Below, piece after piece: positions 6,840 through 55,300 of a DNA stretch of 64,000 bases. The stretch covers positions 181,569 to 245,568 of the forward strand of contig MU619260.1 of NCBI GenBank assembly GCA_025201805.1. Reading direction: 5' to 3'. Origin of the DNA: Parasitella parasitica NRRL 2501 (lineage: Eukaryota; Fungi; Mucoromycota). Positions within the stretch are counted from its first letter, which is position 1, and each line of letters begins with the position of its first letter. Both the position numbers and the translations under genes were made by a program. Under the pieces are notes generated by a model, which searched no databases, was not told the origin of the DNA, and saw only the letters and a list, made by a program, of their open reading frames with translations.

Positions 6840-7346
6840 TGAAAAAACAGACATGGATTTTACGACCAACTGCGTCTTCCTTGATGAATCTGCATTTCAT
6901 ATTAATTTGAAACGTAGTATGGCATGGTCAAAAAGAGAAAGCGAGGAGAAGACGTTGGGCGTGTGAGCAAAGGGACAGTTACGGGACACTATGTTAGTTT
7001 TCTAAAAACCACGATGGATGAAATTGACTAGTATCCACATATGAAAGGCCATTACCTCGTGATGGATAATGCTCCAATCCATACATCGGTTGATATAGCT
7101 AAATATGTAGAATCTCGCGGTTACCGCTGTGTCTATTTGCCGTCCTATTCTCCTGAACTTAATCCAATTGAACAGTTTTGGTCAGTGCTTAAGAGTAAAG
7201 TCAAACGAAACAAGCTACTGGAAACTGAGACACTTATGACAAGAATCAGTGAGGCATCTAATAGTTTGACGCTGAGCGATTTTAAAGGGTTTGTTGGGCA
7301 TTCTCACAAATGCTTGGACAAGTGTCGTAACAGGCAAGCACTCTGA
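6840..7346 (+). mobile_element. Truncated Tc1/IS630-like DD34E transposase remnant
   Basis: TTNCVFLDESAFHINLKRSMAWS, LVMDNAPIH and YLPSYSPELNPIE, with 34 residues between the second D and E. Internal deletion and in-frame TAG near 7030; no N-terminal HTH. Confidence 0.88.
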
Positions 7347-9601: not shown

Positions 9602-9906
9602 TTAGCAGCAACACTCTTCACAGATACAGCAGCAGCCGATGGCAGCGAGGCAATCGGTAATACAGCCTCCACCGCCTCTTAATCTCAACATAAAAGATGA
9701 AGAACCAGCATCTTCTATTAAAAATATAAGTAATTAAAATTGCATAATGGCTCGTTCTGCTTGCCTTGTTGATGATGTTCACACTGGTTGGCATTTTGAT
9801 CGGAGGCTTGCGAGACATTTATGGTAGACATGTGGTTGATAGAGGGGTAAGCATCAGGAGAGTTGGCTACAGAGACCTTGGGAACTTTAGTAACAGATTC
9901 ACTCAT
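9602..9906 (-). CDS. 84-aa protein: low-complexity N-terminus, LRLRGG, CYSTM-like Cys-rich tail
   Basis: Exon 1 9906-9765; GC-AG intron 9764-9715 (GCAAGC...TAATAG); exon 2 9714-9602 reads in phase EDAGSSSFMLRLRGGGGCITDCLAAIGCCCICEECCC*. Confidence 0.75.
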
Positions 9907-10233
9907 TTAAACAAATGATAGAAGAACAAGCTAAAATTTGATCTTTTGAGAAAACAAAAGTATATTTTATACAAAATGTGAGCCATGTGACAAATGAGGT
10001 AATTGGAAGTACATAATTTATTGGCTAGTCTTGGCATTATTCATTTTGTTATGACCTCATACGAAAAGCTAATATGAACTTACCATTACCAGAAGTAGAA
10101 AAAGCTTTAATATAAAATAATAACAAACAGTAAAACAAAAAAAAACAACAAAAAAAAAGTGTATTTGTGTGAAAAATATGAGTGAAAATATATAATGTGA
10201 AAAATGAGTGTTATGCGTGTATATCATTGCTCT

Positions 10234-12242
10234 TTAATTTGCCGGCGATTCTGTCACAATACTGTTTTCAGGTGTTGAAGGGGAAGTTCCGTAAGTAATT
10301 GTACCATTTACTTCTTCGTCCTCTCTTTTAAACAATGTCGCCCAATACTTGACTTTGGTAGCATCAGGCATCAGTACACCACCATCATCAACCAAATCTT
10401 TATCCTTCATTGGATCAAATAAGGGATTGGTGAACTTCTCCTTGTCCGAATTAAAGTAATCCCAAATACTGTAAGTCTTTTCCTGAGGATGATGATCTGC
10501 CCTTTCTGCTTCACTATTGAACAGAAAAGTACCAAATTGGCAGGAATAAACATGATAATGTAGATCAATCAGCATTTGCTCATTGAATTCAAATCGAGTT
10601 GGATACAAACAGATCAGTTGGTATACACAATCCAGGAACTGATGAAATACTGGGCTCGTCTCTCGCTGATAATAATTCGATTTGTAAAACTTATTCTGCA
10701 TGTCCTTTATCGTGTTGGTCGCGGCATTTCCACCTGTGTTTGCTAGATTCACAAAATATTTTTCGTTGCTCAAGTGACCGCATCTATCTTCAAACTTATG
10801 TCCAAAAGAAATCCAATCTTTTTCAATCAGGATCTGGATGCCTTCAAACGTGCGATAATATGGATCGAGACAGAGCTCGCTCAATGACACTAATTGTGAT
10901 GTTCTATCCCAGCCATCCGAACAGTGAACAAGCACATGCGAATTGTATACGTGAATATTCTTGACAATTGTCATTGTGCCTTCCACAACCATAGCAATAT
11001 GCTTTAACCATCCGGATCTCTGCAAAGCCCCTCGATTCACCTGCCCACCAGCAGATTCCATTCCTTGCATTGCTTCACTAAGTTTAGCTAAACTATCTCT
11101 CATGACATGAATATTATCAATGGCCACATAAATCTTGTGGCAATTGCGATAATGGTTCATGTTTTCAGTTCCAGCACCTTTTGCAACATTTCCTACCGCA
11201 TTGGCCATTGGTCTAGCATCCACTATCAAATTCGTTGGAGTAGAACCGTAAACTATTTCGCCATTGGGCCCTGTAGGGACATTGGAGGAGAATACTGCCT
11301 CTATCAATTTTTCATCTTGAATTGATCTCGCTTGTTTAAAGCCAACCATGGGTTGACTACTCCTTGTTATAGTTGCCTGTAAATTGGGGAATATTGTTAG
11401 TTGTGAAATATGCAATCATAACGAAAACCTTACATGGTTATGCCAATGCATATACGACAATGCTGGAATCCTAGCTTTGCTACGATATTTTGCTGCATAA
11501 TTCAATGTGTTGTCGCTGATTTTGAATGGTACCACCAAGGTACGGGGATATGTGGGTGAATACTATCCATAGAACCATGCACATAAATAGGGAATATTTA
11601 CTCCGGAAGACTTGCGATTACTTACCTTGTAATCTCGATTCACTGGTGTGAATCTCCATGTTTCAGCACTCACATCAACGCCCATACGCTCGTATTCTTT
11701 AAGGGGGTCGTATATATTCCAGCCGTTGTTAGCAGTAAATGGCGTCCGTGGCTGATATGCATAGGCATATAGCTGTTCTATGGAATCTACACACACATAT
11801 CTGATTAAAGCGAACTTGAGTGTATAAAAAACTCAAACTTACTGACACATGCCAATTTTTGAATACTATCAAAAACATCTTGGGCTTCGCCATCTTTTAA
11901 AAGAGAGAGAGTAATGATCATGAAATCCCGGCATTTAATATGCAGTGGATGGCGTCCTGACTGAAGAGAGGGTGGTTGTCTTTCTACGGTGTGTATGATA
12001 GGGTAAGGTATCTATTATAGGGGTAAATGATCTGAATTGGAGACGAAAGAGCCTATGTACAAACCCAAAGCTCTTCTTCAGAATAGCTGAATATCAGGTG
12101 ATGGACAGTCAGGTGTAGAGTACCCACAGCGGTTTCTTGACCCCTATCAAGTTGAACATCTTTGGCCTTTTTTGCGTGGTTAGTTGTTGCATTCAGCCCA
12201 AATAATTCAGTCTCTAACCTGAGTGATCTTTAAAAGATCAAT
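10234..12242 (-). CDS. YMR1: Myotubularin-family phosphoinositide 3-phosphatase (Ymr1/MTMR-like), multi-exon
   Basis: Active-site VLVHCSDGWDRT, IVDARP, EKDWISFGHKF, SPVFHQFLDCV. Upstream exons give GTLHLTVHHLIF (GRAM/PH), GWNIYDPLKEYERMG and SPTYPRTLVVP. Start codon uncertain (see findings). Confidence 0.93.
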
Positions 12243-38348: not shown

Positions 38349-41300
38349 TTACTTTGACGTACTACTGAGGCTTTTCTGTGGAATGAATTTTGAATTCAAG
38401 CTTTCTTGAGGTATTTGTTGTGATTGTTGCGCTTCCTTGGTATTTGTAATCGAGGAAAATGATTGCTTTGTGATAATTTTCTCCTCAGTAATGACATCCA
38501 ATTTGACTTCTGTTTGGCCTAGATACAGCCTTACTATGATTGGAACTACGTCTCCAGGCTGTAAGGGTAGTGATTTAGGTAAGTCGATATTGCGTATCAA
38601 AACTTTATCAAGGCGAGAATCCAGCGCAGAATCGATGACCGTGTTTTCAGCACTTGTGCATAGTATAGCTAGACATAAGAGTTATGACTACAGTTCCTGG
38701 ATCAGGCGTACATGACTTACAAACAAAAGCATTATTAGGATAGGTGATATAATATTTCTTTTCAACATATTCATTAGTTTTCATGAAATTGTTGGCTCTA
38801 AACAAGAAATCGAATTTAGACCTGACAAATCTCGTCTCAGAAGATGATTGCGGCAAACTAGCAGTGTTAATAAGTGGATGCAGTACTTCTAAACCGTATG
38901 ATTTCTGTACAATTCTCCTTGCAATATAGCTTGTGTCCCTTGCCAATTCAACAGCACCTCGGACAACGGATTGATCATACTGTGATGGCGCTCGCACTTG
39001 AATCCCTTTGTCAGCGAAATTGTCTTGTATTCTGTTCTGCAGATATTTAGACTGTCCTAGGCCACCTGTTAAAATAATCATATCAAGCTTCATCTCAACC
39101 TTTTCCATTGCATAATATTGATTCTCGATAAGGTGCATAATATTGTTTATAATTGGGTCGAATATCTTTGTAGACATGTCGTACGATGATATCACTATTT
39201 TGGGAGTACCTTTAATTGGTATGTTGATGATGGTATTTTGTTGGCTTTTATACGTAAATTTTTCCTATCGAGTTTGTCAGCACAGGCTGGCAGGGCTTAA
39301 AAATTACTAGTGCTTGCCTTGATATCTAAAATAAAGCTCAACACCATCTGTTCGAGCTCGTAGCTACTCACTACATAATTTCTAGCATAGCACTCATGTC
39401 TTATGAATTTTCTAAATGCATCATCCAAGAATGAAGATCCACATAAGCTGCCACTACCGGCTGTTACCTCGTCAATATAGTATTTTCTGTTGTTTTCTTT
39501 CTTAGAATACTCATAGGTAGCCATGTCGACAGTTCCTCCCCCAGCATCACAAATTAGCGTTCGCACTTTTGTCTTTTGTGGGTTTTCCTTGAAATAATTT
39601 TTGAAGTAGTCGGTGCTGCTGTCGTTTGCATAGAATATAGCAGCAGCCTCAGGTTCGTTCACCAGCAAGAGTCTGTTTGGATTGTCTTGTGTAGAAATGA
39701 TGCCAGCAGAGATAACTGTTTCTCTCATTACCCGTTTCATCTTATCGCTCCAAATTGTGGGCACTGTGAAGCAATACCGATATTTCTTGGCTGTTTTTGG
39801 AAACTTCATCTCCATGGCCTCTTTGATTTTGTCACTCAATGCTCGAAGATAGTTTGATATAGCGTTGATAATAATCATCTCATTCTCACCATTCTCGTCT
39901 ATATTATCCATGTATAGTTTGAATCTTGACATGAGTTTTCCTGATTCTCCAGAGCGATAGTAATCATCAAATGCTTCTTTGCCCCAGTATTTCTGCTGCG
40001 TCAAAGATTCGTCGTATAATGATAAAGTCGGCAGCTGCATCAAGTTTTTGCTATGTGAAACAATTAGCCTTGATAGAAAGCAAGCTACATACTTTTTGTA
40101 AACCCACTCAAAATCAACTTGATCAATGCTATCAATCTTGCTATAATACCATTTAGAGAAACTAGTGCCAAAATCTAAAGTCATAAATTTAGTGGGACAA
40201 AAGAAGAACAGAATAATTAAAACACACCAATGCCGATAATATGCGTGTAGTCATCATCATTGCTGTGCTGAGCATTGTCTTCGGCTAATATACTATGCTC
40301 CTCAACAAGGCAAATGGGTGCGGTCCTTGGGATCCCAAGCTTCTCGCTTAAACCGTAATACACAGCACCATGTGCAGATGAAAGGTCATCATTTGATACA
40401 ATAATCACGTTGCTTGCTATTGCATTAAGCCGCTGTTTCATATATTGAAGATTTGAAAGCGTTCCACACAAGAAAACGTATTCGCCAGATACAGATTTGC
40501 ATTGCTCAGAAACAAGTTTACAGATTTCATCAATAATGGGATCGTATACTTTCTTTTTGAGATCACTCATTTCAAGAGTCAAATATGGGGCGGCTCCTAT
40601 GGTTGATTGAAAAGCAAGCAACTTTATAGGAACTTGCGTGTTGATGCTCAGATCCAAGGAATACTACGATATTTAAAATTGGTATATTAAATTGCTTGCA
40701 TCAGAAAATACCATACCATACCTTCATGTTATCCTCAAAGTATTCGAGCGCATCTGCCCTCATTTTGAATAGTTTATCTTCAGTGTATATGGGGTGCTTC
40801 TTAATAATATCTAGGACATAGCTTTCAAACAGATCGTTTAATTGGTCGCTGCATAATTTATCGCTCGTAAAATCGTGTTCTAATGCTTTGATATCTATAT
40901 CGCTACCGGCACTGACAACCTCCATAACCTTAATTTTGAGGTATTTAGAGTCTACATCGCAAATGATGAGACGATCGTCCAATTTCAAATTTTTGGTCCT
41001 GAGAAGATGCTTCGCCATTGCCGTATAAGAGTCAATAAATAGCAGCTTATCTTCTCTATCGTCATCCTTATAAATTCCAGCTTTTTTGATTGCTTTAGTG
41101 ATGTTAGTTTTGTATCTAGGTTGGCTTGGGTGTTGGAGTGTAAAACAGTATCTGATTCGGCTGATACCCTTTTCGCCTTGGTTTTCTTTAATATCCTCTA
41201 CAACATGTTGATGAAACAGCTCTAAATAATCGGCAGCAGGGTTTCTGTCATTCTCTATAGGTTCCAAATCTTTGACATGCAGCACAAAAGGTAGGTGCTT

Positions 41301-52375: not shown

Positions 52376-55300
52376 ATGATGACTTTTGAAGAAAGTAGTG
52401 GTGTACCCAAAATTCTGTTCTCACAGCGAACCAAGAAAAAGTATAGCCGTGTTATAGGCTTTGGTAAGAAGAACGTCTCTGTTTGGTATGTAACAAACTG
52501 ACGCCATTTTCATAGACCTTGGATCATCTGCTCTTTGCTGCTCGCTCTCCACTGACAAAAACCCAGTCATCGCGTCAGTGTTCAAAGATTGGATCAATGG
52601 CTCAAAACGAAGATCCTCGTATCCTGCTTGCATTCAGTACAAAAACTGGCCTGCTTCGACTGACGATATCAGAGTCGGTTTTAAAGGTCGTCCCAAAGTT
52701 ACTGCAATTAACGATGGCGATGTCTATATCCCCAATATCAAAGGATATGTAACCCGATGGATTACGGAAGGCACTAGTGAGGATGGCCCTGCAGCAGACC
52801 TGGTTCTCTTCAACTTTTTTGAAGCCGTACGGGCTAATTTCGAAAAAGTGTTCCTTGAGCTAAACAAAGATGCAGCAAAATCCTACACCCTTGACAATTG
52901 TCGATTCTGTTTCGCAGTTCCTGACAGTCTCAAGGGTAGACTGGAATACACTGGCCTTATCCGAGAAGCCTTCAAAAGGGCTGGGTTTCTCAAGGAAGAC
53001 GATGATGACAATCGACTGATATTTGTCTGCGATGCAGTAGCTGCTGGCTACAACTGTCTGGCCACACCACGTATTTTTAGCGGAATTGAGCTCGAGAAAA
53101 GCTATTTAGTTGCTGATATTGGGTACGATTCAGCCAAATTCTCAGTTATCAAGGCTCAGACAACAGAGGCTGGCAGCTTTGTCGAATCCGTCATTTCAAG
53201 TGGAACTAAAGGTTATCGCAGCCTCAATGATAATTTCAGAAGCTATTTGGTAGAGAAATCTGAAACGCTTGGCTTAGACATTACCAATCTTAGACAGCTT
53301 GACCAAATTGTTGAATCGTTTGAAAAATATGAAAAGGTATATATGTACATCCATCTTGGCTCAAGCGATGTGTTAAATTTTGTGTAAATTAGGTCAAAAT
53401 TGATTTGAACGATGACGAGGAAACGACGAGCTTCAAAGGCATATCTGGCTCTGTAGAAGTTAGCAACACAGATCTACGACAAGTTGTTTTCGAGCCGTTC
53501 CTGGATGGCATTTTCAGCCTGATCTACGCCCAGTGTGAGGCAAACTCCATCAAGGAAATTATTTTCCGCGGTCAGTACTGTGAAGATCCTTACTTTTATT
53601 ACAAATGCAAAAAATTTACTACCGACGCTACAAAGATGAGGAAGCTGAAGAGTATTCCTACTTGCACTGTATGGGAAAAAGAACCACAATTCATGGTTTC
53701 CAATGGTGCTGTCTCGTTTGGTCTCAGGTCGGCTTCAACACAAATCCCTACTTTGGTCAGCCAGCAGATTTCAGGAATAAAAGAAAGAGATATTCCACCT
53801 AATTCATCCACTTCACCCACTTTATCCACACTAGCCATTTCAAACAATCAGCAACCGAACAAAGCCTCTGCGCAACCTACTGTCGTCCCTAAAGGTCACT
53901 TTGCTGTTGGAATTGGTAGGTTGAATCAAGTATCCAATTTGAACTGGTTGTAACGATTTTCTGATCCATAGATTTTGGAACGACATTTTCCGGATGCTCT
54001 TTTGCTGATATCAGTACGGTAGATTCAAATAACAGACGCGAGATTATTCCGGTTAATGAATGGTAAGGAGGCAGTGTGAGTTAAGAGCGAAGCATGTATT
54101 GATACCGCTCGCATTTACTCAGGCATCAGGCTCAGCCGTATCCTAAAATCTCGACAGCACTGAGATACAACGAGTACAAAAAAGAGTTCACCCAATACTG
54201 GGGTTTTGATGCCTTAGACAAGCGAAAGAAGAAAGGAGACATCAACTTGGAATTCTTTAAGCTTCTTCTGTCGCCCGATAACGTTGAGAGATTTTATGGC
54301 AAAGGAAATAGAGACATTCAGGACATCACAGATAGACTTTTCATGTTCAATGTTGGTCCTCAAAGCGAAAGAAAAAGCAACCATATCAAAACCTTGACAC
54401 CAGTGGATATCATTGCAGAATACTTGTGGAATTTCAATGCCAAAATCAGAGAGATCTTGAACAAAAGATTTAGAGTTAGCTTTAAAGACATGAAATTACA
54501 CTACGTGCTTACAGTCCCTGCCATGTGGACCGAGACTGGTAGATCTACCATGATAGAGGCTGCAATAAAGGCTGGATTGATGAAAAGGGGCGAAGAGAAA
54601 ACAGTGCAGCTTATCACTGAGCCTGAAGCAGCTGCACTCTCCTGCGAAGAATTCATGAAGCACACTTTTAGACTTACAGACGATCTTTACAAAGAGGGCT
54701 TAAATTTCATCGTCTTTGACGCTGGCGGAGGAACTGTCGATCTGGTCACTTTCCGACAACAAAGAGTTGATGGTTATGACAGCATCCATCAAATCGGTGA
54801 TGGTACTGGTGGCACTTGCGGCGCTGTTAATTTAGACAGAAAATTCAGAGAATTGATCGAAACGTTTTATACTCAAGTAATGGGTGTGGGAGATGCAGAA
54901 GAAGAATTTTACAAGCACCACATGGATCGCTTCAAACAAGAAATAAAGGTATGCGTTTCAGTATACCGCCAAACAGCGTGTCAGTATTTTTTCTCAATAA
55001 TTATTAGGAAAATTTTATGCCTACTAATAACCCTAAACGCGAATTTAAAATCGAATTACCAAGGTTTCCCGAGATTCCTATCGATGCTGAGCCTCAGGCG
55101 TACCCTGGATTTGATAATAATTGCAAACTAACGCCTGACAAAAAGACGTTTATAATAACAGAAAGCGATATACAAGAGCTTGTTTTTGACCCTGTCATTG
55201 AAGAAGTACTTGTGTTGCTCAAAAAACAGATTGAAAAAAGCGCCCAGTTCCCATTATCTGCTGTTCTTTTAGTTGGTGGCTTCAGTCAATCAAGATACTT

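What the first reader, a model, noticed from the sequence alone, without database searches (positions are those of the whole stretch)
9602..9906. Ubiquitin C-terminus (LRLRGG) without a ubiquitin fold, fused to a 9-Cys tail: possible DUB-processed lipopeptide precursor
Seen: removing a 50-nt GC-AG intron gives an 84-aa protein ending ...SFM-LRLRGG-GGCITDCLAAIGCCCICEECCC*. The same GCAAGC donor is used in phase at 39317. Established: LRLRGG is ubiquitin residues 71-76, the site cut by deubiquitinases; CYSTM-type tails are Cys-rich membrane/stress modules; N-myristoylation needs an N-terminal Gly. The 56 residues before LRLRGG are polar, too short for a beta-grasp fold and unlike one. Inference: DUB cleavage could release (a) a 22-aa Gly-initiated peptide with 9 Cys suited to myristoylation/palmitoylation or metal binding, and (b) a disordered 62-aa peptide ending in di-Gly that might act as a Pup-like tag or DUB decoy. 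The ORF track misses this product entirely.
Basis: partly seen in the sequence, partly recalled or inferred. Interest (0 to 1): 0.8.

Follow-up and report, generated by a model that had tools for sequence, protein, structure and literature searches.

The report
Fungal lipopeptide behind a ubiquitin tail
Many fungi have a tiny cysteine-rich membrane protein that carries the six-letter cut site from the end of ubiquitin but none of ubiquitin's fold, so it is probably a precursor that a ubiquitin-cutting enzyme clips to free a lipid-anchored peptide; the cut itself has not been shown.

Summary
The gene is real. It is a single-copy, minus-strand, two-exon gene (84 aa) in a Mucorales fungus, with a 50-nt GC-AG intron. 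Mucor circinelloides has an intron at the same junction and Thamnidium has the two halves in one uninterrupted frame. The protein has a disordered head, LRLRGG, and a CYSTM/CYSPD-like Cys tail. Across 43 relatives (Mucoromycota, Microbotryomycetes, a soil fungus) the six residues are the best-kept part: 0.89 identity, against 0.66 for the tail and 0.25 for the head. Conservation drops sharply at both edges of ubiquitin 71-76 (tree changes: P7 11, P4/P2/P1 0, P1' 8). There is no ubiquitin fold. Best reading (0.55): a DUB-class protease cuts after GG and frees an S-acylated peptide. Ordinary DUBs need folded ubiquitin; the ZUFSP/Mug105 family does not, and an intact member is in this genome. Myristoylation is not general (Ala follows GG in 11 of 43), and a Pup-like tag is unlikely. 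Main rival: an uncut basic linker, since plant CYSTMs have K-x-R-G in the same register. No paper links LRGG with CYSTM; the scan had not reported it elsewhere.

The parts
9765..9906 (-). Exon 1: start codon and most of the polar, disordered head (47 codons plus 1 nt)
   Evidence: no Pfam match
9829..9849 (-). Conserved Tyr-Pro...Met patch in the head (residues 20-26); possible docking or sorting signal
   Evidence: Tyr in 36 of 39 rows of the column, Pro 31; Met 5-8 residues after a Tyr in 32
9715..9764 (-). 50-nt GC-AG intron, phase 1
   Evidence: same position as a GT-AG intron in Mucor circinelloides; absent in Thamnidium
9602..9714 (-). Exon 2: Ser-rich linker, ubiquitin-tail motif, Cys-rich tail, stop
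9671..9688 (-). LRLRGG, identical to ubiquitin residues 71-76; predicted cut after the second Gly
9605..9670 (-). 22-residue tail with 9 Cys, CYSTM/CYSPD-like; predicted S-acylated membrane anchor
   Evidence: Pfam PF12734 21 bits, below the 25.2 cut-off; helix in model; hydropathy depends on Cys
9965..9971 (-). TATA box 65 nt upstream of the start codon
   Evidence: a TATA box 63-96 nt upstream in 8 of 11 related loci
10234..11415 (-). Last long exon of the upstream myotubularin gene (synteny marker, separate gene with its own stop)

Best explanation
A small cytosolic precursor: disordered head, ubiquitin's last six residues, then a CYSTM/CYSPD-type Cys-rich helix. Shown: the gene, the motif, its conservation under protein-level selection, the lack of a ubiquitin fold. 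Inferred: a ubiquitin-tail-reading cysteine protease cuts after Gly-Gly. This frees a peptide of about 21-32 residues (22 here) that starts with Gly or Ala and is held on membranes by S-acylation of its cysteines, and drops the head with its Tyr-Pro...Met patch. The cut would act as a maturation or turnover switch. Two candidate cutters: the genome's ZUFSP/Mug105 peptidase, the one DUB class known to cut after RLRGG without a folded ubiquitin, or a USP/UCH enzyme reading L-x-G-G. Myristoylation, if it occurs, is limited to some lineages.
For: Motif identity 0.89 vs tail 0.66 vs head 0.25. Changes on a 39-row tree: P7 11, P6 2, P5 3, P4 0, P3 2, P2 0, P1 0, P1' 8, so the kept window is exactly ubiquitin 71-76. 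Ala appears at P1' in 11 of 43 but never at P1 or P2; P4 is Leu in 43 of 43. Codon differences at P4-P1: 176 synonymous, 32 not. The one apparent loss (Backusella) is a missed 25-nt exon that restores LRLKGG. The only part of the family profile that matches ubiquitin is its last 14-20 residues. The genome encodes a ZUFSP peptidase with the catalytic residues and both Arg-reading acidic residues; such enzymes cut RLRGG-AMC well (PMC5824887). Yeast CYSTM proteins are palmitoylated, not transmembrane (PMC10840359).
Against: No cut was observed. Ordinary DUBs need a folded ubiquitin (PMC8776766). ZUFSP needs both arginines and tolerates Ala at P2, whereas this family frees P5 in Microbotryomycetes (Gln, Thr, Ala), has Lys or Ser at P3 in four genes, and never varies P2: the pattern fits no single known enzyme cleanly. 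The searches held part of the motif, so members that lost it are under-sampled; the attempt at an unbiased tail-only scan gave only chance hits. Plant CYSTMs show K-x-R-G in the same register. Known CYSTMs of yeast and Arabidopsis stay whole with an N-terminal tag. The tree rests on 76 columns and many rows are close kin.
Confidence: 0.55

Rival explanations
1. No cut. LRLRGG is the fungal form of the basic strand and Gly linker that precede the Cys helix in CYSTM proteins: the arginines bind acidic lipids or a partner, the leucines dip into the membrane or dimerise, and the likeness to ubiquitin is convergence.
For: Three plant CYSTM hits have T-K-Q-R-G-[DE]-K-G in register with L-R-L-R-G-G-G-G. 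The Pfam model starts matching at the Arg or first Gly. Venancio and Aravind describe a strand plus linker before the helix. Described CYSTMs are not cut.
Against: A structural strand should accept Ile, Val or Phe; P4 is Leu in 43 of 43 and P6 Leu or Met in 42 of 43. A plain Gly linker should take Ala anywhere, not only after the second Gly. The genome's canonical Pro/Gln-rich CYSTM has no such motif. The motif is better kept than the Cys helix.
Confidence: 0.27
2. A true ubiquitin mimic that is bound but not productively cut: a membrane-tethered pseudo-substrate or docking site for a DUB or other ubiquitin-tail reader. Alternatively it is cut, but the useful product is the head, whose new Gly-Gly end binds ZnF-UBP domains.
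For: Same conservation edges as for a substrate. The head keeps a Tyr-Pro...Met patch. ZnF-UBP domains bind free ubiquitin Gly-Gly ends (abstracts).
Against: An internal motif has no free carboxyl end, which ZnF-UBP binding needs (own knowledge). The residue after Gly-Gly is always small (Gly or Ala), as expected of an accessible bond or a stable new N-terminus. The head is only 25% identical.
Confidence: 0.12
3. After the cut, the head is activated by E1 and attached to other proteins as a fold-less, Pup-like tag.
For: The head would end in ubiquitin's exact tail in most Mucoromycota.
Against: The Arg72-equivalent that E1 reads (own knowledge) is Gln, Thr or Ala in basidiomycete members. Head length and sequence vary widely and it has no fold.
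Confidence: 0.05
4. Not a gene as modelled: the intron is not spliced and the LRLRGG frame is not translated.
For: No RNA reads were seen. Some database entries are read-through forms.
Against: Same intron position in Mucor, intronless orthologues in Thamnidium and others, synteny, TATA box, synonymous-biased change. The read-through entries come from unspliced assembly calls or are marked partial.
Confidence: 0.01

Closest known systems
CYSTM / CYSPD proteins (PF12734; yeast Cpp1-3, Arabidopsis PCC1)
   Same: Small, polar disordered head, C-terminal Cys-rich helix with a Cys run and an acidic residue; databases label the relatives CYSTM-like.
   Different: Scores below Pfam's cut-off; head is Ser/Thr/Gln-rich rather than Pro/Gln-rich, no VYVQ-type strand; a ubiquitin-tail motif sits directly before the helix; described members are not cut.
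Ubiquitin-fusion precursors (ubiquitin-eL40, ubiquitin-eS31, polyubiquitin) and Sde2/SDE2
   Same: An L-x-G-G site joined in frame to a C-terminal product; in those systems a DUB cuts after Gly-Gly.
   Different: Those leaders are folded beta-grasp domains of about 76 residues. Here the leader is unstructured and of variable length, and only the last six residues match.
ZUFSP/ZUP1/Mug105 (peptidase C78) model substrate RLRGG-AMC
   Same: Same five residues without a fold; the enzyme is present and intact in this genome.
   Different: RLRGG-AMC is synthetic; no natural linear substrate is named in the two papers read. Basidiomycete members lack the P5 Arg that ZUFSP needs.
USP1 autocleavage and viral papain-like protease L-x-G-G sites
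   Same: A DUB-class enzyme cuts an internal Gly-Gly with no ubiquitin fold in front.
   Different: Those are self-cleavage or viral polyprotein processing, not a cellular precursor cut in trans.

Membership tests
CYSTM/CYSPD | Small protein with the Cys module at the extreme C-terminus | tested here: met
   84 aa, ends in three Cys
CYSTM/CYSPD | Helix with 5-6 Cys, 3-4 in a run, followed by an acidic residue | tested here: met
   9 Cys, CCC run then Glu-Glu; helix 64-77 in a low-confidence model
CYSTM/CYSPD | Pfam PF12734 at or above the curated cut-off (25.2 bits) | tested here: not met
   21 bits for exon 2; 23 of 29 relatives match at E<=0.1, best 4e-5
CYSTM/CYSPD | Pro/Gln-rich head and a hydrophobic strand before the linker | tested here: inconclusive
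   Head is Ser/Thr/Gln/Ala/Pro-rich; profile positions 1-13 mostly unmatched; the LRLR stretch could stand in for the strand
CYSTM/CYSPD | S-palmitoylation and plasma-membrane location | not testable with these tools
   Shown for yeast members only (PMC10840359)
Ubiquitin / ubiquitin-like fusion precursors | Beta-grasp fold before the Gly-Gly | tested here: not met
   No Pfam match for exon 1; profile match limited to ubiquitin 63-76; no strands in the model, pLDDT 52; leader mostly 35-66 residues
Ubiquitin / ubiquitin-like fusion precursors | Conserved L-x-G-G in frame with a C-terminal extension | tested here: met
   43 of 43, with the stated search bias
Ubiquitin / ubiquitin-like fusion precursors | Cut after Gly-Gly by a DUB | not testable with these tools
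   Needs an experiment
ZUFSP substrates | R-x-R-G-G | tested here: inconclusive
   Met in the window gene and 35 of 43 relatives; Lys or Ser at P3 in 3, no Arg at P5 in 5 basidiomycete rows
N-myristoylated proteins (after a cut) | Gly at the new N-terminus in an acceptable context, kept across the family | tested here: not met
   Window gene fits the loose pattern, but 11 of 43 start with Ala and only 20 of 43 fit
Pup-like conjugated tags | Conserved head and conserved activation residues | tested here: not met
   Head 25% identical; P5 free in basidiomycetes

The most novel reading that the evidence does not exclude
Fungi use ubiquitin's bare six-residue tail, with no fold, as a built-in cut site that matures a lipid-anchored peptide, and in Mucoromycota the cutter is the ZUFSP/Mug105 peptidase. 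This would give that enzyme family its first natural linear substrate and explain its unexplained liking for RLRGG.
Probability: 0.28. Interest if true: 0.85.

Novelty: new variant of a known kind. Interest (0 to 1): 0.64.

Why it matters
The rule behind the split-ubiquitin assay is that DUBs cut only after a folded ubiquitin. A natural cellular precursor that keeps only the tail, across at least two fungal phyla, would be an exception. It offers a concrete substrate with which to test why ZUFSP/Mug105 enzymes cut RLRGG so well, which PMC8776766 leaves open. It would also add a proteolytic step to the CYSTM stress-protein family, whose working is largely unknown. The test is cheap: one tagged 84-residue protein and two point mutants.

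Tried and rejected
The joined 84-residue model was not used as a query anywhere; exons were searched apart by reference, and only checked frame and length. P0004 (651 aa) is an unrelated repeat protein, a chance hit. Metagenome scan with the motif alignment: 85 pattern matches, none confirmed. Tail-only DNA pattern, meant as an unbiased test: only Gly/Cys-rich chance hits. Other fold-less LRGG genes in this genome: none credible; counts equal the reversed-pattern control, though these patterns miss motifs split by an intron. Recent paste from a ubiquitin transcript: rejected, since an intron splits the motif at the same place in Blakeslea, Backusella and Phycomyces and codons differ freely. 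Read-through from myotubularin: rejected, it has its own stop and the small gene has its own TATA box. Fold search skipped: model confidence too low. ESM Atlas clusters of Ascomycota and Basidiomycota look alike but give no sequences, so the motif was not checked there. Paper searches found no link of LRGG with CYSTM.

Full report
OBSERVATION. The sequence is as described. On the minus strand an ATG at 9906 opens a 142-nt exon, followed by a 50-nt intron with a GC donor (9764-9715, phase 1) and a 113-nt exon that ends at 9602; together 84 codons, with 56 residues before LRLRGG and a 22-residue, 9-Cys tail after it. It is the only [LIVM]RGG in six frames of the window and the gene is single-copy in the 32.8-Mb genome. 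The GC donor at 39317 exists and joins two frames in phase.

THE GENE IS REAL. The organism is a Mucorales fungus; the closest relative of exon 1 is from Parasitella parasitica. The neighbours are myotubularin and PIG-M, and the same order holds in Sporodiniella and Mucor circinelloides, with myotubularin also adjacent in Thamnidium. Mucor circinelloides has a GT-AG intron at the same junction and phase. Thamnidium and another relative have no intron, and join the homologues of both exons in one frame. Exon 1 alone matches such a relative at 48% identity. A TATA box lies 65 nt upstream, and 63-96 nt upstream in 8 of 11 related loci.

THE FAMILY. Three word searches and one full HMMER scan gave relatives across Mucorales and Umbelopsis, in Microbotryomycetes (Rhodotorula, Sporobolomyces, Phenoliferia), and in an unnamed soil fungus whose neighbours look like Dikarya genes (lineage not tested). 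All have a polar head of variable length, the motif, and a Cys-rich tail. The tail resembles CYSTM but stays under Pfam's cut-off. The genome has a separate, canonical Pro/Gln-rich CYSTM gene without the motif.

THE MOTIF IS THE BEST-KEPT PART. Mean pairwise identity is 0.89 for the six residues, 0.66 for the tail and 0.25 for the head. Of 43 sequences, P4 is Leu in all, P2-P1 Gly-Gly in all, P3 Arg in 40 (Lys 2, Ser 1), P5 Arg in 38 (the five others are Microbotryomycetes), P6 Leu or Met in 42. The next residue is Gly in 32 and Ala in 11. On a tree built without these columns the fewest changes are P7 11, P6 2, P5 3, P4 0, P3 2, P2 0, P1 0, P1' 8 (39 rows, 76 columns, weakly resolved). The kept window thus starts and ends exactly where ubiquitin 71-76 does, and Ala toggles in only after the would-be cut. 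Codon differences at P4-P1 are mostly synonymous (176 against 32). The one apparent loss, a Backusella paralogue, is an annotation error: a skipped 25-nt exon restores LRLKGG (read). An intron splits the P5 codon at the same place in Blakeslea, Backusella and Phycomyces, so the motif is old. Caveat: the queries held part of the motif, so losses are under-sampled, and the tail-only control failed.

NO UBIQUITIN FOLD. The family profile matches ubiquitin only over residues 63-76 (probability 45%), and its best matches among solved structures are ubiquitin C-termini. The model of the Parasitella protein has no strands and one helix at 64-77, at low confidence. Leaders are mostly 35-66 residues with few hydrophobic residues. 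For contrast, this genome's eS31 leaders have diverged from ubiquitin and end in a different L-x-G-G but keep full ubiquitin length (following earlier notes s1-688540 and s1-710448).

WHO COULD CUT IT. Ordinary DUBs need a folded ubiquitin; ZUFSP-family enzymes cut RLRGG-AMC faster than ubiquitin-AMC, and the reason is left open (PMC8776766; kinetics in PMC5824887). This genome encodes a C78 peptidase whose exons align with ZUP1 and keep the catalytic Cys, His and Asp and the two acidic residues that read the arginines. That makes it a real candidate for Mucoromycota. The fit is imperfect: ZUFSP needs both arginines and tolerates Ala at P2, while the family frees P5 in basidiomycetes and fixes P4 and P2, which is closer to what USP, UCH and viral L-x-G-G proteases read. 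USP1 shows that a DUB can cut an internal Gly-Gly without a fold, though on itself.

MECHANISM. Shown: gene, motif, selection, no fold, candidate enzyme present. Inferred: a cut after Gly-Gly that frees a short Cys-rich peptide; S-acylation as its anchor, by analogy with yeast Cpp1-3 (PMC10840359) and because the tail's hydrophobicity halves without Cys; loss of the head, which carries a kept Tyr-Pro...Met patch. Gly and Ala are both stable new N-termini in yeast (own knowledge), which fits the tail being the product. Yeast Cpp1 is degraded through Rsp5, so shedding the head might change turnover; only 5 of 39 heads have a true P-x-Y, so that link is weak. Myristoylation is not family-wide, and a conjugated tag is unlikely.

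RIVAL. Plant CYSTMs carry T-K-Q-R-G-[DE] in the same register, so the Arg-Gly may be an old feature of the module and the ubiquitin likeness partly inherited chance. Described CYSTMs stay whole. This reading does not explain the fixed Leu at P4, the fixed second Gly, or the sharp edge after it, but it is not excluded.

VERDICT. A real, widespread, uncharacterised fungal CYSTM-like protein with a strictly kept ubiquitin tail and no ubiquitin fold. It works most likely like a ubiquitin-fusion precursor (0.55) but is not a member of that class, and it is CYSTM-like without meeting the family's score. No paper in the library holds both LRGG and CYSTM, and the scan's notes on this genome hold nothing like it. 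New variant of a known kind; interest 0.64.

Noticed in passing
L048:1250-2471 (G000:C82, about 87.0-88.2 kb): ZUFSP/Mug105-family peptidase with intact catalytic and Arg-reading residues and a short N-terminus; no ubiquitin-binding modules were looked for.
   Followed up: partly
L044:4001-4429 (Backusella circina, GCA_025399235.1): Public gene model skips a 25-nt exon; including it restores the LRLKGG motif.
   Followed up: yes
L049, L050, L051 (G000:C139, C91, C8): eS31 leaders are diverged ubiquitin-like domains ending in ELLGG; the third copy ends in ELLAG and looks degraded. Agrees with earlier notes.
   Followed up: partly
L019 (G000:C53:167059): A polyubiquitin whose last unit runs on into a 90-residue tail with a Cys pattern like an AN1 zinc finger.
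   Followed up: no
L042 (G000:C17:317895): Canonical Pro/Gln-rich CYSTM gene without the ubiquitin-tail motif, split by an intron inside the Cys helix.
   Followed up: partly
window:38647-40184 (-) and 54247-55131 (+): Two Hsp70-like actin-fold genes; the first has the in-phase GC-AG intron at 39317 (no Pfam hit at 0.001), the second a weak HSP70 match.
   Followed up: partly
window:48877-49917 (-) and 7041-7346 (+): An NDC10_II domain frame (often Crypton-type transposon derived, own knowledge) and a DDE_3 transposase fragment.
   Followed up: no
P0018 (Mucor velutinosus): The orthologue is named 'Bifunctional purine biosynthesis protein PurH' in public records, which is a naming error.
   Followed up: no
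P0032, P0036, P0040-P0045, P0051: Early-branching Mucoromycota and Rhodotorula members have a longer tail with a second Cys run encoded by very small exons (10-13 Cys); many public models stop early at the intron.
   Followed up: partly
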